The translations under genes and the position numbers were made by a program. Positions 8,065 to 47,025 of a stretch of DNA of 47,025 nucleotides are shown here, in pieces; the first letter of the stretch is position 1; each line of letters begins with the position of its first letter. Location of the stretch: assembly GCF_001194135.2 (NCBI RefSeq), contig NC_068981.1:179705500-179752524 (forward strand), given 5' to 3'. The DNA comes from Octopus bimaculoides (lineage: Eukaryota). The notes below the pieces were generated by a model. The model did not search any database. It was not told where the DNA came from and worked only from the letters and a program-made list of their open reading frames with translations.

Positions 8065-10462
8065 CTCTATGTATTATGTATGTTTTCATATGTTCATGTA
8101 TACATATGTTCATACACACATTCTAGCATATATTTGTGTATGCATGGTTTAAGGTTTTCTATGTATGCATGCGTATGTGTTAGTACAAGTATGCAGAAAT
8201 GTGTATATATGCATATGTTTGTCTGTACTTATGTGTTTAAGACTTAGTCTTTCATATACACGTGACTATGAATTTAAGAGTCTATACATAGTTAAGTATT
8301 TATTTACAAGCATACCTCTATGTACGTGTGTGCTTTCCCTTTAATCAATATGTTTCTGCATATATATATAAGTATGCGAGTGAGTTTGTATTTGTGTGCG
8401 AGTGTGCAAAATTGTGTACCTTTGAGAGTCAGTGTCTATGGCTATGAGAGTAATCTCTTACATTAAATCAAATGAAAATGTGAATATAGAGATAATGGAA
8501 CATAGAAAATAAATAGTTGGCAACTTGATTCAGAAATTTAGGGACGGAACATTTGGCTTCTTTTTCAGTGAAGAACTTAAGGAAGCCTTTAAGTTTGGGA
8601 CTATTAAAATTAGATAGCTGGTTAGTGTGAGTACATTTGAATAAAAAATGTATTATTGCTTGCGTATTCACAAGACCAAACAACACCGGAAGGGATAGAA
8701 TGTGGCATATTTCCATTCTTCGGTTAATATTTGCTAATAAAACGGGAGATGGCTCACATAAGCTTTCTTACTTTTGAGTACAATTTGATATGCTAGTGAA
8801 TGAAACGTTAACTTTGCAGACCGAAAAGATAAATAATTGCCCAAGATTTAAATATCTATTTGTTTTAAATTATCGATGAAGTTTTGATGAGATCTCTTGG
8901 ACGACGTATTGATCGGTTTGATTTATATAGTATTTATAACGTAACTTCTGAAAGGATAAGCAAACATCTTTAATCGATGGCTTGTGATTCAATTTCGCTA
9001 TACTGATGTACGCCATTAATAATGTAGAATAAATGCTAAATGGTGATAAGATTATCATAAGCTTTATTAACTTTATCGTAAACTTTGGAGAAATTCCGAG
9101 TATTTCTCATAAACTAGCAGCACTACAGATAACGTTGGTGTAGAGAATTATTGATTGCAATTACTAACAGCATTTGCCATTTTGTACTGTTAAATAACTT
9201 GTTGATAGTTAATAATTAATAAAAACCTTTATCTTACAATTAAAAAAGTAAAATGCCAATATCAGGGATTCACTTTATATGAACAAGAACGTTCATGGTA
9301 ATTATATCTGAATTCATGTATAATATACAGTGACTCCAAAATTGATTAATGGAGCATTTGGAAATGTAGATAAGTATAATTGATTCCATCTGTACTGTTA
9401 CGCGCATGCCTATCCAATTTTGGAAGGGCAATTCTGGATGTCTCAGACAAGAACAACCTTCATTATTTACTTTTCATATCTTTCTCTTACTAACTACCTG
9501 TCTCTCTCTCTCTCACTCTCACTCTCACTCACACTCTCACTCTGTATGACTGTCTCTGGCTCTCTGTCGCTCTGTCTCTGTATCTCTGTTTCTGTCTCTG
9601 TCTGTCTGTCTGTCTTCTCTTTCTCTTTCCATGTCTATTTTAATCTAAACCGATTTCCAGAGGAAAGAATAACACGTGGTATAAAGCATACGATTAGAAT
9701 TGCTTACAAAGGTTCTCACCAAACCATATTATGCAATATCTATAAAATATCAAATGATCACTTCTGTTAAATGATATTAATACTAATATTGATATTTTCG
9801 TTGTTTTCTCTAAAGCTTTCAACTTTCGTACACTGTATCCAGGAATAGAATGCGATCTCGTAAGTAGACATACTGGAAGACTTCAAAAGCTTTGACTAAA
9901 TTACTCTGGTCTTCTTCAATTGATAACAAATTCTATATTATAAGACGTACTAAAAGCCATCAAGTATAACGAAAATACTATAATGACTCAATGTCTTAGG
10001 AGCCGAGAATAAGGTTTGTTATGATATTCCTGTTTCTTTTATATATGCTGTCTAAGCTGAGCAAAATCAATTGAGCTGTATGCATGAACATACCATGTTG
10101 ATATTACAGATCTTCATCTACTCTTTAACAATGTCCATTACTGTAACTTTGGGATGAATACCAGTTGATAACTATTTAATCCAATATTTTCTCCTCAGAT
10201 CAAGAAGAACTCTTAGGAGTGTATTTGCACGGTTCAGTAGGTAACTTCAAAATGGTCGCCTGTATTTACAGGGTTTCCTGCCGTCAAAAATGATTTGGAT
10301 CCCACCAAAATGACATGTAACTTAAAAACAGCAAGATCATCTATGTTATCGAAAAGAGCCAACTTCGGGCTAAAAGCCAGCGCTTATGATCATTGGTCCA
10401 TCCCACTATAAACACACACACACAGACACGCACACACACACATAAGTATGTATGTATATTAT

Positions 10463-10603
10463 GGGTGCAGGAATAGCTGTGTGGATAAGAAGCTTATTTT
10501 GCAGCCAGGTATTTTCTGGAAGGCACCTTGGAAAATTGTCATCTACAATAGACCCGGGCACTGAAAGTTAATTTGTTAAGCGGAAAGTGTGTGGAAGCCC
10601 ATC

Positions 10604-10657
<54 letters not shown>

Positions 10658-11071
10658 TATACGTTGTTTATACACCTGTCTTCGTCTTTTGTTTTTCTGT
10701 AAATTTCAACTATATATATGTGTGTATGTGTGTGTATGTGCATTTATATATGTATATATACACACACACATATATATATATATATATGTATGTACATATG
10801 TTTATGTGTGTATGTATGTGCATATATTTATAAGGTATAATCTATAAACATGATATATATATATGTCTTCGTGTTTATGTTTTTGCACTACACTCCCGCT
10901 TGACAACATTTGTTGGTTTGTTTATGACCTGCAATCTAGTAGTTTGGTAAAAGAAACCGATAGAACGAGTACTAGCCTTATCAAAAATAAGCGCTTGGCT
11001 CGATGTGTTTGAATTAACACATTAAGGAGGTACTCCAGCATGGCCACAGTCCCGGTAAAAGAGATAAAAGA
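10463..11071 (+). mobile_element. SINE family A, old diverged copy with expanded internal (TA/TG)n linker
   Basis: Head 'gcaggaatagctgtgtggataagaagctt...ggcaccttggaaaattgtc...gaagcccatcg' and 3' half 'cgcttgacaac...ccgatagaacgagtactag...ggaggtactccagcatggccacagt...gataaaagata' align by eye to the 13635-14069 copy. Confidence 0.8.
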
Positions 11072-11464
11072 TATCGTTGAAGCTTATTTTACCCAGTACT
11101 TAGTGGTATAAACTATAAATGTTGAATCTTGTATTGAACGCAGTTACGCTAAGCATTTAATCTACCTCTTTCCTGCTCTGCTGATAATTCTAAACATTAT
11201 CAAAAAATCAATATGTATTGATTTCTTTCTTAACTAAACAAATGTCTAATTATATGTTAGAGTAAAGTCGATTCAATCATTCTTTACAATGGTGTTGTAT
11301 TAGTATATGTAATCAAAACCAGAAGGATAGAATATAAATAGGACGATAAGGACTAGGAAAACTATGAGAAGATTCAAAGCAGATATTGAAGTAGGCGGAA
11401 AATGTTGAATGTTTCGACTGTAACCGGTGGCATCAGAATTTAGTAACACTAATTCCTATTAACC

Positions 11465-11947
11465 CCGACAAAGTCCAATCCTTGTTGCGTTGAGAGAGCT
11501 TGTGAGCCTCAGTAAGCTCAATATCACCACGAGTTATGCGAACGGAGTGCATGCTCCTGGTAGGGATTTCCATTCTGGATGGGCTAAAACAGGGTTTCCC
11601 ATAGTGGGCGGTACTGACCCCTTGGGGGTGGGGTGAAAAGGTTTAGGGGGCGTTGAAGAAGAGTGGGGCGATAATGGATTGTAAACAGGAGAGTGGGTCG
11701 ATGACAAGAGCCAACAGGAGAGAAGCAAAAACCAACATCTGGCATTACACTTCAGACCCTGATCTGGAAGCCAGAAAGGCGGCAGAAGGGAGGACATCCT
11801 AAAATAGCAGAAGGCGAGTCACTTAGATGGATCTGAAGATGAGAACATCCAACTGAAGAGAAGCAGAAAAGACAGCCCAAAGTCAGAACAGGGGGGGATC
11901 GTTGATGGGCTATGTTCCATAGGGAGGGAAACGCTTAAGCAAGTAAG
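11465..11947 (+). mobile_element. Internally deleted RTE-clade non-LTR retrotransposon (5' UTR piece plus ORF C-terminus plus AAGT tail)
   Basis: 11726-11940 translates, with frameshifts, as QKPTSGITLQTLIWKPERRQKGGHPKI / DLKMRTSN*REAEKTAQ / IVDGLCSIGRETLK, matching the RTE C-terminal pattern (ALxWxPEGxRxRGRPK...W...AQDR..W...GLCS), and ends in 'taagcaagtaagtaa'. 11530-11583 'gagttatgcgaacggagtgcatgctcctggtaggg' resembles RTE 5' UTRs (recalled). Flanking 15 bp direct repeat with 12/15 identity. Confidence 0.75.
11590..11690 (+). mobile_element. Possible left end of a hAT-like non-autonomous DNA transposon
   Basis: Begins CAGGGTTTCCCA(t)AGTGGGCGGTAC, like Charlie/hAT termini (CAGGGGTTCCCAA); GC-rich; no right end found. 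Confidence 0.4.
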
Positions 11948-13634: not shown

Positions 13635-13813
13635 GGCGTAGGAGTGGCTGTGTGGTAAGTAGCTTGCTTATGAACCACATGGTTCCGGGATCAGTCCCAC
13701 TGCGTGGCACCTTGGGCAAGTGTCTTCTACTATAGCCTCGGGCCGACCAAAGCCTTTTGAGTGGATTTGCTAGACGAAAACTGAAAGAAGCCCGACGTAT
13801 ATATATGTATATG

Positions 13814-13850
<37 letters not shown>

Positions 13851-14069
13851 TTGTGTGTCTGTGTTTGTCCCCCCAACATCGCTTGACAACCGATGCTGGT
13901 GTGTTTACGTCCCCGTATCTTAACGGTTCAGCAAAAGAGACCGATCGAATAAGTACTAGGCTTCCAAAGAATAAGTCCTGGTGTCGATTTGCTCGACTAA
14001 AGGCGGTGCTCCAGCATGGCCGCAGTCAAATGACTGAAACAAGTAAAAGAGTAAAAGAGAGTAAAGAGT
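13635..14069 (+). mobile_element. SINE family A, near-intact reference copy
   Basis: Pol III A box-like TGGCTGTGTGG and B box-like GGATCAGTCCC; CORE-like CACCTTGGGCAAG; internal (TA)n(TG)n; 3' tail GGCGGTGCTCCAGCATGGCCGCAGTCAAATGACTGAAAC plus (GAGTAAAA)n. Confidence 0.93.
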
Positions 14070-15624: not shown

Positions 15625-16131
<507 letters not shown>

Positions 16132-16254
16132 TTTAGAGTGTCCCTCGGACCGGAGTAATAACCGAAATACTTACAATGAAGTGGGCTCCATTAAAGTGGG
16201 ACCCAAAGTGCCAGAAGATAGTGTCAATCCGCGCAACTGATTAAATGTACCGTC

Positions 16255-16378
16255 CAACGTTAGTATTTTATTTACGGCCCCCAGAATGGTCAAAATGTAA
16301 ATCGTTATCGGTGGGGTTTGAACATAGAAAGTACGTTGTTGTAACTAATACCACAACGTCATTCTGTTTATCGCTCTT
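16255..16378 (-). mobile_element. Highly degraded SINE family B fragment
   Basis: 'tagtattttatttacggcccccagaatggtcaaaatgtaaatcgttatcggtggggtttgaacatagaa' aligns loosely to the reverse complement of the family B body. Confidence 0.45.
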
Positions 16379-16830: not shown

Positions 16831-17897
16831 AAAGAAAGAAAAAGAATGCTGAGTGCTGCTCGTTTTAATTACCAATACGTGCCTATGAATTACTGTGAAG
16901 TAGCTTGAGCTGAAAATTAGCAGGACATATAATAGAATAACAATTAAACAAACGATGAATTATTAACTGTCATCTACAATTCCACTCTCATCGGCTGAAT
17001 CGTCTTTATTGCTTCTGATCGTTCAACCAACTTCCAGGACCAAAGTATTTAGTTGTTTCTCTTTGATGGAAAATATTTACAGGCAGATATTTATTTACTC
17101 ATCTATTTCTGTCTAACATCATGAAAAAACATCACTGCTACTTCTTTTTTTGTTTGTTTGTTTTGCTTCGTTTGCATTGTTTTGTTATTTTGCTTTCTCT
17201 TATTTGTCTTTCTAAAGAAAAATGTCTTTATTGTTGTTTTAATGTTTTGCTGCTATTGATTTGTATTTTCTTTCTGTCATGTAGTTCCTTTGTTCTTTTA
17301 ATTGTTACTATAAGTGTTAAGCGCTGTAAGAGCGTAAATACAAGAAGGCTATTTTTGTGTTAAACGTACCATAGCTAACAGTTTGTATAGATACTGACGA
17401 AATGTTTGCTAATACATCAAGACGTATACGAGAAAGCGTGTTAATGTTTTCTTTTTATTAAGTTAAGTTGGAGCATATCTAAATTCTAAATAACACCTTT
17501 ACTCATGCTACAAATGATACAACTATTAGGTGTAATTAATAGCAAATATGTTCAAGTGGTAAACAATTCATCTGTGAATCTGGTACACCATTCACATAAG
17601 ACAGCATTAATCTTATATAATTCATTAGTGTACAAGTTTTCTATTAATAAGTTATGTCTGCCTAATAAAGAGATAAGTGGCATATATTTCGCTACACTCA
17701 ATCAAGCAAAAGTTCGACACGTCATCTGCTGTCCAGTTTGAGTGGCTATTAAAATATTTCGCCATATTTAATCATGCAATTGATGACATTTTAAATTTTA
17801 AGTTCAATACAATTAAACTGTGGGTGTTATTTTAACTTTCAGTCTTTATAGGCTTAGTTCTATGGAAATTAAGCATTAACAGGTAAGTGTTTGTATT

Positions 17898-17951
17898 GGT
17901 GCACCAGCATGACCGCAGCCACTTGGCTGAAACACATAAATAAATAAATAA
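17898..17951 (+). mobile_element. Isolated LINE/SINE 3' tail (~40 bp) with (TAAA)n
   Basis: GGTGCACCAGCATGACCGCAGCCACTTGGCTGAAAC, homologous to the family A and LINE tails. Confidence 0.75.
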
Positions 17952-19023
17952 ATTATATACATGCATGCACACACGTACACACACACAAACAGAGTTCTCC
18001 AGGTAGCAGATTAAAGCTTACATCTTCTCTAAGGAATGGACAACCATCTCCGAATCATATAAGTCTTTTGGGGGTTTTTTCCTGTTTCTTTTCGACAAAA
18101 GTAGGATATTTTCACATCGTCGGCAATCTTCCTATTTGAGGCTTCCAAATGAATAACTTAAGATTTATCAACATTAAACATGTTCCAGGTACTACTTGAT
18201 CAAATCAATTCCACCTTGCAAATTCTGGATAAAAAGACTTCTACAACAGATGTGATTTTCTTTCATTGTCGTGGAAAGGTTATATTCTTGCACTGAAACT
18301 CACATTTGTGAATAATAATGCGCTTATATTCTCGGTAAAAACATTGTAAATTGATGTTTATTTGTTTCATTGGTGGCAGATTGGTGTGATATTGCATACA
18401 TTATTTTAGTACTTATTTCTGATTAACGAATGTATTTTACTTATATTACTGATGCTATTATTGCTTCAAGAAAGTTTTCATAGCACTGTGAGATCGTACT
18501 GCCCCTTAGAACCTTCGTATCTAGTTCCAAATATTTTAAGTTACCTGTATTGATGAATATGGAGGACTGAGAGATATTCGTATATTCCACATGAACACTA
18601 AGTTGTAACTTGTCCATGTAGGTTTCCTCTTACTTCAAGTAAAGTATAGTTCATGCTGTTTTATTTTAGCAGCGAAATACAATCGCTCTTCCCACGTTCT
18701 GTCATTTTTTCAAACAAACCTCTCTGCCTGTATGTGCTGTATTAACATGCCAACTATAAATGTTTGAAAACTTACCTGACCATCCGACACTTGACATTCT
18801 AAGTTTCGTACCTTATATCCAAACTCTTATACAGAAAGGTAAATAAAAAAAAAACATCTTTTTGGCAACGTCTACAAAAATATCAGGCATAGCTTTACAA
18901 CTTCCTTCACGGTGGATTATTATTTAATCCACAATTCATATTCAAATTTCCTTCACTTCCTTCTCAGTATTTAAAAACTTTATATCTGACTGTATCACCT
19001 CAAACAAAATTGCACCACAGTGA

Positions 19024-24101: not shown

Positions 24102-25357
24102 ATTGCTTCCAAGCAACATGACCCCGGTTTTAGTCCCACTGCGTAGAACCTTGGGACAGTATCTTCTACTAAAGCCTCGGGCCAACTGAAGACTTGTGAG
24201 TGAGTTTGGTAGACGAAAGTGGAAGAAGCCCGTCGCCTATATATATATATATATATATATATATNNNNNNNNNNNNNNNNNNNNNNNNNNNNNNNNNNNN
24301 NNNNNNNNNNNNNNNNNNNNNNNNNNNNNNNNNNNNNNNNNNNNNNNNNNNNNNNNNNNNNNNNNNNNNNNNNNNNNNNNNNNNNNNNNNNNNNNNNNNN
24401 NNNNNNNNNNNNNNNNNNNNNNNNNNNNNNNNNNNNNNNNNNNNNNNNNNNNNNNNNNNNNNNNNNNNNNNNNNNNNNNNNNNNNNNNNNNNNNNNNNNN
24501 NNNNNNNNNNNNNNNNNNNNNNNNNNNNNNNNNNNNNNNNNNNNNNNNNNNNNNNNNNNNNNNNNNNNNNNNNNNNNNNNNNNNNNNNNNNNNNNNNNNN
24601 NNNNNNNNNNNNNNNNNNNNNNNNNNNNNNNNNNNNNNNNNNNNNNNNNNNNNNNNNNNNNNNNNNNNNNNNNNNNNNNNNNNNNNNNNNNNNNNNNNNN
24701 NNNNNNNNNNNNNNNNNNNNNNNNNNNNNNNNNNNNNNNNNNNNNNNNNNNNNNNNNNNNNNNNNNNNNNNNNNNNNNNNNNNNNNNNNNNNNNNNNNNN
24801 NNNNNNNNNNNNNNNNNNNNNNNNNNNNNNNNNNNNNNNNNNNNNNNNNNNNNNNNNNNNNNNNNNNNNNNNNNNNNNNNNNNNNNNNNNNNNNNNNNNN
24901 NNNNNNNNNNNNNNNNNNNNNNNNNNNNNNNNNNNNNNNNNNNNNNNNNNNNNNNNNNNNNNNNNNNNNNNNNNNNNNNNNNNNNNNNNNNNNNNNNNNN
25001 NNNNNNNNNNNNNNNNNNNNNNNNNNNNNNNNNNNNNNNNNNNNNNNNNNNNNNNNNNNNNNNNNNNNNNNNNNNNNNNNNNNNNNNNNNNNNNNNNNNN
25101 NNNNNNNNNNNNNNNNNNNNNNNNNNNNNNNNNNNNNNNNNNNNNNNNNNNNNNNNNNNNNNNNNNNNNNNNNNNNNNNNNNNNNNNNNNNNNNNNNNNN
25201 NNNNNNNNNNNNNNNNNNNNNNNNNNNNNNNNNNNNATAAGTACTAGGCTTACAAAGAATAAGCCCCGGGGTCGATTTGCTCGACTAAAGGCGGTGCTCC
25301 AGCATGGCCGCAGTCAAATTACTGAAACAAGTAAAAGAGTAAAAAAAAAAGAGTAAA

Positions 25358-26946: not shown

Positions 26947-27062
26947 TTATCTTTTATCTTTTATTTTTCTCAGTTAATAGACTGCGGCCATACTGGGGCA
27001 TTGCCTTGAAGAATTTATAGTCGATCGACTTGGTACATTTTTTATGCTTGGTACTCATTTTA
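26947..27062 (-). mobile_element. SINE family A 3' fragment
   Basis: Minus strand 'gagtaccaagc...gtcgatcgact...ttcttcaaggcaatgccccagtatggccgcagtctattaactgag..aaaagataaaagata'. Confidence 0.8.
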
Positions 27063-28858: not shown

Positions 28859-29876
28859 GAATTTTCTATTTCCATTTTAAAAATAATTTTTAATGTGTTT
28901 TTTTTTTTTCTGAAATTTTTTTTTAGGCTTCACTGATCTATGCCTCTCTTGCACTTTTTCTGCTTTCTGCTAATGACAGCATCACACTTTATTGATCTTG
29001 GTTCAGGTTGATCGCGTGCCACGTTCACAAAGGACAAGAACGAAAAAAGGAAGGAAAGAGAGAAAGAAAGAGGTGAATAGAGAAATGGAGAGAGAGAGAA
29101 TGAGAAAAAAGAAAATGAGGTCCATTATTTCACTCTCATTAAAGCACACACAAACGCAAACGCACACACACAGAGTCACATGAACACACGCACGTAATCA
29201 AGGAGAAATATTTGTTTGCGTTTTATGTATATTGTCAAGACGATAGTGGACCACTCTTAGTATTTTTTCTGTCTCCATTCCTCTATAATACACTACCTTT
29301 ACTTTTTCTGTCTTTCTTCCTTTCTACCTTTCTCTCTCCCTTCTCTATTACAATTTTTCCATTCTTTTTCCTCATCACCTTCTCACTGCTCGAAGCCAGA
29401 CTTTGCGTGTGTGTGTGTGTGTGTGTGTGTGTGCACTTCTTAGCTTTCCTTCTTTGTGATTTTCTACTACTAACCCTAGTGTAAAGTCGGTTTGTAAATT
29501 TAGCTATTCGTGTCAATAACCCTCTACTCTGGAATAGTGAATGTTTTTATTCACTATATAGTCTATTCATGTCAGAGAAACGGCAACACAATGGAGAAAA
29601 TCCAAAGTAATAGGCTAATAGAACAACAAAAACTTTCGCTTCACTCAGATTCTCGAGTAAAGCAAAGTCTGTATGTATATATTGTATATATACATATATG
29701 TGTACGAACTGATACATGTGTGTGTGTATATATATNNNNNNNNNNNNNNNNNNNNNNNNNNNNNNNNNNNNNNNNNNNNNNNNNNNNNNNNNNNNNNNNN
29801 NNNNNNNNNNNNNNNNNNNNNNNNNNNNNNNNNNNNNNNNNNNNNNNNNNNNNATATATATATATATATATATACT

Positions 29877-29925
29877 GGCGGTGCCCTAGCATAGCCTCAC
29901 CCTTTGGACTGAAACGCGTAAAACT
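29877..29925 (+). mobile_element. Isolated LINE/SINE 3' tail fragment
   Basis: GGCGGTGCCCTAGCATAGCCTCACCCTTTGGACTGAAAC. Confidence 0.65.
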
Positions 29926-30003: not shown

Positions 30004-30101
30004 CCGTAAACTAGCGGTTCAGCAAACTTCTCCGAGAGGAGTACCAGACTTAAAAAGGCGGTGCCCCAGCATGGCCGATACAAGTAAAAGATAAAAGATA
30101 T
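30004..30101 (+). mobile_element. SINE family A 3' fragment with internal deletions
   Basis: 'cgtaaactagcggttcagcaaa...gagtaccagactt...ggcggtgccccagcatggccg..acaagtaaaagataaaagata'. Confidence 0.75.
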
Positions 30102-34873: not shown

Positions 34874-35378
34874 GGCGCAGGCGTGGCTGTGTGCTAAGAA
34901 GCTTGTTCCCCAACCGCATGGTTCTGGGTTCAGTCCCACTACGTGGCATTTTGGGCAAGTATCTTCTAATATAGCCTCGGGCCAACCAAAGTCTTGGGAG
35001 TGGATTTGGTAGACGGAAACTGAAAGAATCCCAACTTGGTATTAGTATCTTCGGTCCATAACTGATGAAAAATTAGGGTCCTTGTGTCTGTCCTACGTAT
35101 ACGTTTTGTAGTATTTAATGCATTTTTCATTTATGAAATAAACTGAACAACATGCATCTCGACTTTGTGTGTCGTTGTTTCTATATTTGTTCCTCCATCA
35201 CCGCTTGACAACCAGTGCTGTTGTATTTATGTCCCCGTAACTTAGCGTTTCGGCAAAAGAGACCAACAGAATAAGCACTAAGCTTTAAAAAAGCCCTGCG
35301 TTCTATTTGTTCGACTAAAACCCTTCAGGGCGGTGCTCCAGCATGGCCGCAGTCAAATGACTGAAACAAGTAAAATAA
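34874..35378 (+). mobile_element. SINE family A copy with non-microsatellite internal segment
   Basis: Intact head and tail; linker replaced by ~135 bp of unique sequence (about 35031-35165). Confidence 0.9.
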
Positions 35379-40557: not shown

Positions 40558-40591
<34 letters not shown>

Positions 40592-40600
<9 letters not shown>

Positions 40601-41046
40601 TTTTTCTTAAGTTTCAGCTTAGAGCTGCGGCCATGCTGATGCACCACCGTGTTGCTACACTGTTATTACAGGGAGCCTCTTACAATATGTGGCACTTGGT
40701 GAAGAATGGAGTTTGATTTAGCAACCCTCATTTGCACCTCCTGCCGCGAGGTAGGTTCATCTGGGACTCTCGATAGGAAGAGGTCCAACTTTGATTTAAA
40801 AACTCCTACATCTACTTTGTGCAGATTCCTCAGGCTCTTTGGAAGAATATTAAAAAGCTGTGGGCCCCTGAATCCCAAGCTGTTGCAGTAACTGGTCCTG
40901 AAGCGTGATGGCATTGGTGGGATCTTTGGCACTATGCAGTGTCGTCCCGTTCTGGCATTGGTGTAGCTTTCAATGCCAAAATTTGGCACAATTCCTTCCA
41001 GGATCTTCCAGATGTATATTGCTGCATACCTCTCCCGCCTTCTCGA
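40592..41046 (-). mobile_element. 5'-truncated CR1/L2-group LINE: ORF2 C-terminus, ~60 nt 3' UTR and poly(A)
   Basis: Uninterrupted frame RRRERYAAIYIWKILEGIVPN...RTGRHC...SLGFRGPQLFNILPKSLRN....FKSKLDLFLSRVPDEP...SNSILHQV, the typical post-RT C-terminal region of CR1/L2-group LINEs. Stop at 40666-40668; A14 tail at 40592-40605. Confidence 0.9.
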
Positions 41047-41599
41047 ACGCAAAGCAAACATAGACACAGAGAGGAAGAAAGTTTTCATTTATAAATATTG
41101 ACGTTTACTGGCAGTATCATGAATTTTAATTAACGAGAGCGCGCGCTCAGACATGTTAGAATTCAATTTATTTGCATAGGAAATATTTTTTTCATAGACA
41201 CACGCATTTACACATAGGCATACATGTATTTTATACATACGCACACATATGTATGCGTGTGTATGTGTGTGTGCGTGTGCGTGCGTGCGTGTGTGTGTGT
41301 GAGTGTGTGTGTGTGTGTGAGTGTTTGTGTGTGTGTGTGTGTTTGTATGTGTGTGTGTGTGTGTGTGTGTTTTGTGTGTGTGTAAGGTGGCGAATTGATC
41401 AGGTATTTAAAGCTTCGAATAGATTGCTTTGTAGTATTCGTTCAAGCTCCCTATGCTCTGAGTTACATAACGCTTCAGTAAACTTTGTCTTTCATTGAGA
41501 TCTTCCAATAAAGCACCAGTCCCGTATTGTGGACTTGTTCTTTTCATTCTCTGCCAGTCTCTTTCTTTCTGGAAGAAATGGACTATGGTTAGACCAATA

Positions 41600-46716: not shown

Positions 46717-47025
<309 letters not shown>

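What the first reader, a model, noticed from the sequence alone, without database searches (positions are those of the whole stretch)
40611..40648. The LINE 3' UTR and SINE family A share a 3' tail with a structure-conserving hairpin: a candidate partner LINE in the same window
Seen: the LINE tail (-) reads GGTGGTGCATCAGCATGGCCGCAG-CTCTAAG-CTGAAAC and the SINE A tail (14002-14040, 35329-35367) reads GGCGGTGCTCCAGCATGGCCGCAG-TCAAATGA-CTGAAAC, with 21/24 identity before the hairpin. The hairpin differs in sequence but keeps pairing: CAGCT-cta-AGCTG in the LINE, CAGTC-aaat-GACTG in the SINE, CAGCC-actt-GGCTG at 17916-17929. Established: stringent LINEs recognise a 3' stem-loop shared with their SINEs (eel UnaL2/UnaSINE1 precedent). 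Inference: SINE A is mobilised by this LINE clade, probably by a sister subfamily given the different stem and tail repeat.
Basis: partly seen in the sequence, partly recalled or inferred. Interest (0 to 1): 0.75.

Follow-up and report, generated by a model that had tools for sequence, protein, structure and literature searches.

The report
Octopus SINEs borrow a LINE tail
A short 38-45-base RNA module made of two small hairpins ends a family of octopus LINE retrotransposons. The abundant octopus SINEs end in the same module, so they very probably hitch-hike on that LINE's enzyme; this is a well-known mechanism, here seen in a pair I could not find described.

Summary
The window is octopus DNA. 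At 40611-40648 (-) a 5'-truncated LINE fragment (last about 133-140 aa of ORF2, stop codon, 17-nt spacer) ends in GGTGGTGCATCAGCATGGCCGCAG-CTCTAAG-CTGAAAC. SINE A ends in the same module: 21/24 identical in the first 24 nt, with a different but still paired stem.

The tail belongs to the LINE and is not an inserted SINE piece. Eight other LINE copies carry it 1-46 nt after the intact ORF2 stop, followed by 7-10-nt tandem repeats. They come from Octopus vulgaris, Argonauta hians, a Logan read assembly, an unnamed NCBI assembly and ENA metagenome contigs.

The "unstructured" 24 nt is itself a hairpin (HP1), so the module is two adjacent hairpins. Every intact copy folds this way on its own. Base pairs covary in both hairpins.

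Across LINE subfamilies the tail is 87% identical, while the adjacent coding DNA is 59% identical.

Sister subfamilies have a SINE-like HP1 (23/24) and (AATAAAAG)n-type repeats. No sampled LINE has the SINE's exact TC/GA stem.

The best reading is a stringent-type LINE/SINE partnership of a CR1-like LINE clade with an octopus CORE-SINE. The mechanism is known. I found no description of this pair in the searchable literature. Mobilisation itself is inferred.

The parts
40666..41088 (-). C-terminal part of LINE ORF2: a 140-aa open frame whose stop codon is at 40666-40668. The element is 5'-truncated at about 41085.
   Evidence: The ORF is listed. tblastn with octopod LINE proteins matches only 41082-40690, at 63-68% identity. 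Homologues are listed.
40649..40665 (-). 17-nt spacer between the stop codon and the tail (taacagtgtagcaacac). The same lead-in occurs in the second copy, L020.
40629..40648 (-). Hairpin 1 of the LINE tail: GGUGGUGC-AUCA-GCAUGGCC. It has a 7-bp stem with a conserved G/G mismatch and a G.U pair. Its sequence is nearly invariant across LINE subfamilies and SINEs.
40615..40627 (-). Hairpin 2 of the LINE tail: CAGCU-cua-AGCUG. The outer CAG/CUG is invariant. The inner pairs and the loop vary while pairing is kept.
40611..40614 (-). Conserved AAAC that follows hairpin 2 in nearly all copies.
40560..40610 (-). 3' terminal A-rich stretch (TTAAGAAAAAAA...) that has grown into an (AT)n microsatellite. 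It sits where other copies have 7-10-nt tandem repeats.
13635..14066 (+). SINE A copy 1. It has a tRNA-like head with A and B boxes, a CORE domain, an internal microsatellite, a 3' body, the two-hairpin tail at 14002-14040 and (AGTAAAAG)n. A possible target-site duplication is AGTAATA.
34874..35375 (+). SINE A copy 2, with its tail at 35329-35367.
24103..25355 (+). SINE A copy 3, interrupted by the assembly gap at 24265-25236. Its tail is at 25290-25328, and one stem base is mutated (GA to TA).
46827..47025 (+). SINE A copy 4: head and CORE only, cut off by the end of the window.
15625..16131 (+). Diverged relative of SINE A (64-77% identity) with a decayed copy of the tail at 16077-16115.
10522..11083 (+). 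Diverged relative of SINE A. In its tail at 11026-11083, hairpin 1 is recognisable, hairpin 2 is truncated, and (GATAAAAG)n follows.
26967..27005 (-). Tail of another SINE-like element. Only the tail and a few bases upstream match SINE A. It is followed by (GATAAAA)n.
17895..17952 (+). Orphan tail. It has LINE-type hairpins (GGUGCACCAGCAUGACC and CAGCC-acuu-GGCUG), then (AAAT)n, and unique DNA upstream. It is most simply an extremely 5'-truncated LINE copy.
29877..29915 (+). Decayed tail lying just after the assembly gap at 29736-29853, so its upstream context is unknown.
30057..30089 (+). SINE tail with hairpin 1 intact and hairpin 2 absent, followed directly by (ATAAAAG)n.

Best explanation
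The 38-45-nt segment is the native 3' end of an octopod LINE clade. The clade is of the APE + RT type and looks CR1-like. The octopus CORE-SINE family 'SINE A' and its diverged relatives have acquired this 3' end.

As RNA the segment forms two adjacent hairpins:
- HP1 is GGYGGUGC-NNCA-GCAUGRCC. Its sequence is almost invariant, with a conserved G/G mismatch and a G.U pair.
- HP2 is CAGNN-loop-NNCUG. Only its outer 3 bp are invariant; the inner pairs and the 3-8-nt loop vary freely as long as pairing holds.
- AAAC follows, then a 7-10-nt tandem repeat, usually of the RTAAAAG type.

Shown here:
- the shared sequence;
- its position 1-46 nt after the ORF2 stop in nine LINE copies of about seven subfamilies from two octopod genera;
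- its higher conservation than the coding sequence;
- the common fold and compensatory changes;
- its presence at the 3' end of SINEs that otherwise share nothing with the LINE.

Inferred by analogy with eel UnaL2/UnaSINE1 and other stringent LINEs:
- the LINE ORF2 protein recognises this module on its own transcript;
- it starts target-primed reverse transcription on the terminal repeats;
- Pol III transcripts of the SINE that end in the same module are used in trans.

The LINE copy in the window is a dead 5'-truncated insertion. The real driver of SINE A would be a sister subfamily.
For: - The tail occurs far above chance: 8 hits against 0.03 expected, and 11 covariance-model hits in the window.
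- Independent LINE copies carry the tail after ORF2. Their sources are O. vulgaris, ENA contigs, Argonauta hians (two subfamilies), an unnamed NCBI assembly, and a second copy of the window's own subfamily.
- The spacer between stop and tail is 1-46 nt in intact copies.
- The L024 tail was not used to build the model, yet scores 48.8 bits, E = 3e-12.
- Each of the seven LINE and SINE tails folded, and the L024 tail, folds alone into the same two hairpins. Z-scores are -2.1 to -4.4 in seven of the eight; the decayed O. vulgaris copy gives the same fold at z = -0.07.
- 90.8% of cells are paired, against 23-43% when the partners are slid.
- Covariation:
  - HP2 pair 4: CG 9, UA 5, UG 1.
  - HP2 pair 5: CG 10, UA 2, UG 2.
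  - HP2 pair 6: CG and GC.
  - HP1 pair 3-18: CG 9, UA 4, UG 2; a C-A combination is never seen.
- The first 24 nt of the tail are 87% identical between LINE subfamilies, while the last 300 coding nt are 59% identical.
- The Argonauta element has Exo_endo_phos_2, RVT_1 and a roughly 230-aa C-terminal domain, with no RNase H.
- Its RT is of the non-LTR type, with best PDB matches to LINE-1 ORF2p and R2.
- In Argonauta the LINE has this tail, but the CORE-SINE there has a different 3' end. This points to a transfer from LINE to SINE in the Octopus lineage.
Against: - No sampled LINE copy has the SINE A stem (TC/GA).
- No intact full-length LINE of this clade was seen in Octopus. I saw only truncated or decayed copies, and the Argonauta element has a frameshift.
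- The compensatory changes amount to only about 4-5 independent events. The more robust measures (pairs with a double change, further pair types) are reached by 118-222 of 500 shuffles.
- Two SINE tails in the window lack HP2 yet keep the repeats (30057-30089, 11026-11083), so HP2 may not be strictly required, or they were deleted after insertion.
- Activity periods were not compared.
Confidence: 0.8

Rival explanations
1. The tail on the window's LINE is a SINE fragment that inserted, or was joined by assembly, just after the stop codon. The LINE and the SINE would then be unrelated.
For: In the window there is only one LINE copy. It is short, and SINE tails outnumber it about 9 to 1. The assembly is a gapped draft.
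Against: Eight other LINE copies, from different assemblies, species and subfamilies, have the module at the same place. One of them is a second copy of the same subfamily with the same UTR lead-in. The LINE tails have their own diagnostic states (GGT.., a CT/AG or CC/GG stem) that differ from those of the SINE.
Confidence: 0.02
2. The transfer ran the other way. The LINE clade captured its 3' end from a pre-existing SINE, or both took it from a third source such as a host RNA.
For: Sequence sharing alone does not give direction. SINE copies are far more numerous.
Against: The tail is present in all sampled LINE subfamilies, which differ by 30-45% at protein level, and in both Octopus and Argonauta. 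The Argonauta CORE-SINE has a different 3' end. A distant marine relative of the LINE has an HP1-like sequence and a two-hairpin fold. No Rfam family matches the tail.
Confidence: 0.05
3. The tail is shared by descent, but SINE A is or was mobilised by another enzyme, for example the RTE elements reported as active in the octopus brain. The hairpins would then be a relic with no role in recognition.
For: RTE and Dong-R4 are abundant and recently active in octopus (PMC9115989, PMC13282606). Two SINE tails without HP2 still end in the repeats.
Against: The module is more conserved than the coding sequence and keeps its pairing through compensatory changes, which implies selection on the RNA. The SINE 3' end shows no other LINE-like segment. 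CR1 families are also among the recently active LINEs of O. vulgaris: 13 families, 787 insertions.
Confidence: 0.1
4. The apparent covariation in the hairpins is an artefact of a small, related sample, and the conserved element acts as primary sequence only.
For: The double changes trace to a few subfamily-level events. The counts of pairs and pair types do not exceed shuffles (118-222 of 500).
Against: HP2 loops vary from 3 to 8 nt, and the inner stem has four different sequences (CU/AG, CC/GG, UC/GA, UU/GG), all of them paired. No subfamily-level sequence breaks pairing. Pairing falls to 9-43% when partners are slid by 1-3 columns. Each intact sequence folds alone to the same structure at 73-97% ensemble frequency.
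Confidence: 0.1

Closest known systems
Eel UnaL2 / UnaSINE1 (Kajikawa and Okada 2002) and zebrafish ZfL2, the experimentally proven stringent LINE/SINE pairs. Cited from my own knowledge and through PMC4824008.
   Same: The SINE and the LINE share only a short 3' segment. That segment forms a stem-loop whose structure is kept. It is followed by short tandem repeats rather than poly(A).
   Different: The sequence is unrelated: the Rfam library gives no match to this tail at any family, even at E up to 10. This module has two adjacent hairpins rather than one. The first has a nearly invariant sequence. The LINE looks closer to CR1 than to L2. No experiment exists for this pair.
CR1 3' ends of amniotes (a hairpin plus an 8-nt microsatellite, ATTCTRTG) and tortoise Pol III/SINE with PsCR1 (Ohshima et al. 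1996). See the table in PMC3747384.
   Same: A very short 3' UTR, hairpin(s) directly followed by a 7-8-nt tandem repeat, and tRNA-derived SINEs that copy it.
   Different: The sequence and the repeat unit differ (RTAAAAG here). Two hairpins are present here. Membership of the CR1 clade is not proven by phylogeny.
Mollusc SINE/LINE pairs: oyster Vhc_1, BivaV-SINE2 and BivaCORE-SINE1 with CR1-1/CR1-14_CGi (PMC4758252, PMC4824008), and bivalve CORE-SINE with CR1 (PMC11481361).
   Same: The same phylum, the same kind of partnership (a CORE or V SINE with a CR1-type tail), and 'mosaic' tail swapping between SINEs that share a core domain.
   Different: Those pairs are from bivalves. I found no cephalopod pair in these papers or in the 2013 list of SINE/LINE pairs (PMC3747384). 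Tail sequences could not be compared because the figures are not held.
Octopus SINEs OR1/OR2/OK (Ohshima and Okada 1994) and the 'tRNA-Core' SINEs that dominate octopus repeat annotations (PMC8967140).
   Same: SINE A has a tRNA-like head and a CORE-like domain and is very abundant in Octopus. It is probably the same family as OR1 or OR2; the two papers I read disagree on which of them is the CORE-SINE.
   Different: Those papers, as cited, name no partner LINE.

Membership tests
Stringent-type LINE/SINE partnership (shared 3' tail) | The SINE 3' end is homologous to the 3' end of a LINE of the same genome, and the homology is confined to the tail. | tested here: met
   21-23 of 24 nt are identical, plus CAG..CUGAAAC. 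BLAST finds no similarity between the SINE A body and the LINE fragment upstream of the tail.
Stringent-type LINE/SINE partnership (shared 3' tail) | The tail is a native, conserved part of the LINE family rather than a secondary insertion. | tested here: met
   Nine LINE copies of about seven subfamilies, from Octopus and Argonauta, carry it 1-46 nt after the stop. The tail is 87% identical against 59% for coding DNA.
Stringent-type LINE/SINE partnership (shared 3' tail) | A conserved stem-loop supported by compensatory changes. | tested here: met
   Searches support it. The caveat is that there are few independent events, and the pair-count measures do not exceed shuffles.
Stringent-type LINE/SINE partnership (shared 3' tail) | The 3' terminus is a short tandem repeat, not poly(A). 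| tested here: met
   (AGTAAAAG)n, (AATAAAAG)n, (ATTAAAAC)n, (AAGATAC)n and (AAAT)n. The window LINE copy itself ends in an A-run plus (AT)n.
Stringent-type LINE/SINE partnership (shared 3' tail) | An intact LINE with the same tail was active at the same time as the SINE. | not testable with these tools
   No octopus genome could be searched by DNA. The metagenome, bacterial-genome and viral scans gave only chance hits or none. Only truncated or decayed Octopus copies were seen.
Stringent-type LINE/SINE partnership (shared 3' tail) | Trans-mobilisation of the SINE tail by the LINE protein. | not testable with these tools
   This needs a retrotransposition assay.
CR1 clade of LINEs | ORF2 with an N-terminal APE endonuclease, an RT and a long C-terminal domain, with no RNase H and no REL endonuclease. 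| tested here: met
   In Argonauta L016, Exo_endo_phos_2 lies at 8308-9522 and RVT_1 plus the C-terminal domain at 9830-11278. No other domains were found.
CR1 clade of LINEs | Placement of the RT domain within CR1 in a phylogeny with reference clades. | not tested
   No reference LINE library was available and the database names were uninformative.
CR1 clade of LINEs | A short 3' UTR with hairpin(s) followed by a microsatellite-like repeat. | tested here: met
UnaL2 LINE 3' element (the RNA family in Rfam, named from memory) | A match to the family's covariance model. | tested here: not met
   No Rfam family matches the tail at the gathering score or at E up to 10. The module works like this family but is not a member.
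CORE-SINE superfamily (SINE A) | A tRNA-derived head with Pol III A and B boxes. | tested here: inconclusive
   A-box-like TGGCTGTGTGG and B-box-like GGTTCAGTCCCAC are visible in four aligned copies. ARAGORN and the Rfam tRNA model call nothing.
CORE-SINE superfamily (SINE A) | A conserved central CORE domain shared between SINEs with different heads and tails. | tested here: met
   Only positions 70-159 of SINE A (CCTTGGGCAAGTG... and onward) are shared, at 84-89% identity, with an Argonauta SINE whose head and tail differ. The resemblance to the MIR core is recalled from memory. Octopus SINEs are annotated as tRNA-Core in PMC8967140.

The most novel reading that the evidence does not exclude
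A single octopod CR1-like LINE clade, recognised through a two-hairpin 3' module, supplied the machinery for the Octopus-specific SINE explosion. SINEs make up about 12% of the O. vulgaris genome and about 40% of its repeats. On this reading:
- HP1 is read as sequence and HP2 as shape.
- The key event was the capture of this tail by a CORE-SINE after the split from the Argonauta lineage.
- The module may be much older than octopods, because a marine relative with about 45% protein identity keeps an HP1-like sequence and the two-hairpin fold with a completely different HP2.
Probability: 0.4. Interest if true: 0.55.

Novelty: new member of a known kind. Interest (0 to 1): 0.38.

Why it matters
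Octopus genomes are unusual among molluscs for their huge SINE load, and papers on octopus repeats have concentrated on RTE elements. Naming the LINE clade whose tail the main SINE family carries turns "what drove the octopus SINE expansion" into a testable question. It can be addressed with age landscapes of the matching LINE subfamilies and with a retrotransposition assay using HP1 and HP2 mutants.

The two-hairpin module also gives a compact covariance model for annotating LINE and SINE 3' ends in cephalopods. One hairpin is constrained in sequence and the other only in shape.

The principle itself, that stringent LINEs share a structured tail with their SINEs, has been textbook knowledge since 1996-2002. 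This is therefore an incremental finding and not a surprising one.

Tried and rejected
- **Collection scans for the tail.** A scan of JGI metagenome contigs gave 12 hits, all GC-rich bacterial chance matches with no flanking similarity. The stricter pattern found nothing in bacterial/archaeal genomes or viral contigs. No octopus genome could be searched by DNA, so the sample of tails is limited to the window and to 12 contig look-ups.
- **Naming the LINE clade from database annotation.** Thousands of homologues exist, but their names are 'hypothetical protein' or absent. Pfam gives only RVT_1 and Exo_endo_phos_2. PDB has only L1, R2 and group II relatives.
- **tRNA origin of the SINE head.** ARAGORN and Rfam found nothing.
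- **Target-site duplication of the LINE fragment.** It cannot be resolved because the 3' flank is an (AT)n microsatellite.
- **More distant LINE relatives (45-51% protein identity: L021-L023, L025).** The model does not find the tail there. L021 nevertheless shows an HP1-like sequence and a two-hairpin fold.
- **L018.** The contig runs into bacterial-looking DNA and has no tail, so I set it aside as probably chimeric.
- **Albertin et al. 2015.** The paper could not be read.

Full report
**What the window is.** The 47-kb window is gapped draft assembly with 5,810 N in 14 runs. The best named relative of its LINE protein is from Octopus vulgaris, so this is an Octopus genome.

**Check of the observation.** On the minus strand, a 140-aa open frame (41088-40666) ends in a stop codon. 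A 17-nt spacer follows, then GGTGGTGCATCAGCATGGCCGCAGCTCTAAGCTGAAAC at 40648-40611, then an A-run and (AT)n.
- SINE A tails at 14002-14040, 25290-25328 and 35329-35367 read GGCGGTGCTCCAGCATGGCCGCAGTCAAATGACTGAAAC followed by (AGTAAAAG)n.
- Identity over the first 24 nt is 21/24.
- The 14-nt core with up to 2 mismatches occurs 8 times against 0.03 expected.

**The LINE in the window is only a stump.** tblastn with octopod LINE proteins of 232-776 aa matches only 41082-40690, the last roughly 133 residues. It is a roughly 0.48-kb, 5'-truncated, dead-on-arrival insertion. It represents a family; it cannot be a source of enzyme.

I searched the C-terminal protein and a profile of its relatives, then fetched the DNA encoding them.
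- Eight further LINE copies carry the same module right after ORF2:
  - L001, O. vulgaris chromosome OX597818;
  - L002, L003 and L017, ENA metagenome contigs;
  - L019, an unnamed NCBI assembly;
  - L016 and L024, two subfamilies in Argonauta hians;
  - L020, a Logan read assembly.
- L020 is the same subfamily as the window copy and shares the UTR lead-in aataacagKgtagcaa before the tail.
- In copies with an intact C-terminus, the distance from stop to tail is 1, 1, 13, 17, 27, 27 and 46 nt. The module is essentially the whole 3' UTR.
- The L024 tail was not used to build the covariance model, yet scores 48.8 bits, E = 3e-12.
- The 'inserted SINE fragment' reading is therefore refuted.

**Anatomy of the module.** MAFFT aligned 17 tails without difficulty.
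- RNAalifold predicted two hairpins, not one.
- Each of the seven tails folded, and the L024 tail, gives the same structure on its own: (((.((((....)))).))).(((((...))))).... Seven of the eight have ensemble frequency 0.73-0.97 and z-scores -2.1 to -4.4. The decayed O. vulgaris copy reaches the same fold at frequency 0.27 and z = -0.07.
- HP1 is GGYGGUGC-NNCA-GCAUGRCC. Its sequence is nearly invariant, including a G/G mismatch and a G.U pair. Its third pair changes C-G to U-A with U-G intermediates (CG 9, UA 4, UG 2), and a C-A combination is never seen.
- HP2 keeps CAG/CUG and varies inside. Pair 4 is CG 9, UA 5, UG 1. Pair 5 is CG 10, UA 2, UG 2. Pair 6 is CG or GC. Loops are 3-8 nt.
- 90.8% of cells pair, against 23-43% when partners are slid by 1-3 columns.
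- Percent paired, double-change cells and the covariation score were each reached by at most 1 of 500 shuffles. The sturdier counts of pairs and pair types were reached by 118-222 of 500. The events behind the covariation are few, about 4-5.
- AAAC follows HP2, then a 7-10-nt tandem repeat: (AGTAAAAG)n, (AATAAAAG)n, (ATTAAAAC)n, (AAGATAC)n or (AAAT)n.

**Constraint.** Between LINE subfamilies, the last 300 coding nt are on average 59% identical. The first 24 nt of the tail are 87% identical. The tail is the most conserved part of the 3' region.

**Which LINE matches SINE A?**
- In the first 24 nt, SINE A is 23/24 identical to L017, 22/24 to L019 and L024, and 21/24 to the window LINE.
- After HP2, SINE A reads AACAAGTAAAAGAGTAAAAG. 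The O. vulgaris LINE L001 reads AACAAGTAAAAGGATAAAAG and L019 reads AACCAGTAAAAGAATAAAAG.
- None of the nine LINE copies has the TC/GA inner stem. Because the inner stem of HP2 seems constrained only in shape, an exact match may not be needed. That last point is inference.

**What kind of LINE?**
- The Argonauta element L016 has Exo_endo_phos_2 at 8308-9522 and RVT_1 plus a roughly 230-aa C-terminal domain at 9830-11278, with a frameshift between them. No RNase H or REL endonuclease was found.
- The RT is of the non-LTR type, with best PDB matches to LINE-1 ORF2p and R2.
- Database names did not help.
- A short UTR with hairpin(s) plus a roughly 8-nt repeat also fits CR1-type ends.
- CR1 is listed among recently active LINEs in O. 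vulgaris, with 13 families (PMC13282606).
- I call it CR1-like, with clade membership unproven.

**The SINEs.**
- SINE A has a tRNA-like head (A-box-like TGGCTGTGTGG, B-box-like GGTTCAGTCCCAC), a CORE-like domain, an internal microsatellite, a 3' body, and the tail. ARAGORN and Rfam do not call a tRNA.
- Diverged relatives at 15625-16131 and 10522-11083, and other elements at 26967-27005, 29877-29915 and 30057-30089, carry the tail too.
- 17895-17952 is an orphan, LINE-type tail with unique DNA upstream.
- The window thus holds 11 tails: 1 on the LINE, 1 orphan, 1 with unknown context behind an assembly gap, and 8 on SINE-type elements (3 on SINE A itself).
- The 20-kb O. vulgaris locus holds 1 LINE and 2 SINE A tails.

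**Direction of transfer.** In 35 kb of Argonauta DNA, the LINE has this tail (two subfamilies plus one orphan copy). The local CORE-SINE shares only the CORE region with SINE A (84-89% identity, 6 copies) and ends in a different 3' sequence. This fits an old LINE tail captured by a CORE-SINE in the Octopus lineage. Such 'mosaic' tail swapping is described for CORE-SINEs and bivalve SINEs (PMC11481361).

**Depth of conservation.** LINE relatives with 45-51% protein identity (L021-L023, L025) are not hit by the model. One of them, L021 from a Tara Oceans sample, has GGCTGGTGCTTACTGCATGGGCC followed by TCTTAA..TTAAGA and AAAA. It folds into two adjacent hairpins with z = -3.8. This is a single-sequence lead suggesting that the architecture is older than octopods.

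**Mechanism.**
- Shown: the shared, conserved, structured 3' module on LINEs and on SINEs, with terminal repeats.
- Inferred by analogy with UnaL2/UnaSINE1 and other stringent LINEs (cited in PMC4824008 and PMC3747384): the ORF2 protein binds the module, primes reverse transcription on the repeats, and accepts SINE transcripts in trans.
- Rfam has no family matching this tail. It works like the UnaL2 element but is not a member of that RNA family.

**Known or new?** Tail sharing is textbook.
- The 2013 compilation of SINE/LINE pairs lists no cephalopod pair.
- Mollusc papers describe bivalve and gastropod pairs only.
- Octopus repeat papers do not discuss partners.
- Four full-text searches found nothing specific.
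- Repbase and Dfam could not be consulted, so the pair may already be recorded there.
- Verdict: a new member of a known kind, of modest interest.

Noticed in passing
L024:8676-8765, 9684-9773, 11049-11138, 11415-11504; L016:1533-1622, 16208-16297: Argonauta hians has an abundant SINE that shares only the CORE region with octopus SINE A (84-89% identity). Its head is different and its 3' end is different (..GGAGAGTCATTTACAKTTT). The LINE with the two-hairpin tail nevertheless lives in the same genome.
   Followed up: partly
window 30057-30089 and 11026-11083: Two SINE tails keep hairpin 1 and the terminal (ATAAAAG)n repeats but lack hairpin 2 or its 3' arm. They could be deletions after insertion, or a sign that hairpin 2 is dispensable for some SINE subfamilies.
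   Followed up: partly
L021:1287-1411 (Tara Oceans read assembly, Logan ERR1726525): A LINE relative with only about 45% protein identity has, about 90 nt after its stop, an HP1-like sequence (GGCTGGTGCTTACTGCATGGGCC) and an unrelated second hairpin. Together they fold as two adjacent hairpins (z = -3.8).
   Followed up: partly
protein P0007: A 94-aa protein filed in NCBI/UniRef as 'hypothetical protein, partial [Escherichia coli]' is 71% identical to the octopus LINE ORF2 C-terminus. It is probably cephalopod DNA contaminating a bacterial record.
   Followed up: no
window 13806-13860, 24240-24264, 47000-47025: [quoted passage not shown] Several assembly gaps in the window start at such repeats.
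   Followed up: no
L016:5207-7540: Just upstream of the Argonauta LINE lies a second, different reverse-transcriptase remnant (RVT_1 in two frames, with a weak zf-RVT match). It is another LINE type.
   Followed up: no
L018:942-1600: The ENA contig that encodes P0005, a LINE C-terminus, continues into GC-rich, bacterial-looking coding DNA and has no tail. It is probably a chimeric metagenome contig.
   Followed up: no
window 17895-17952: This is an orphan tail of only about 40 nt plus (AAAT)n, with unique DNA upstream. Its hairpin states are of the LINE type. If it is a LINE copy, it shows that the module alone is enough to be inserted.
   Followed up: partly
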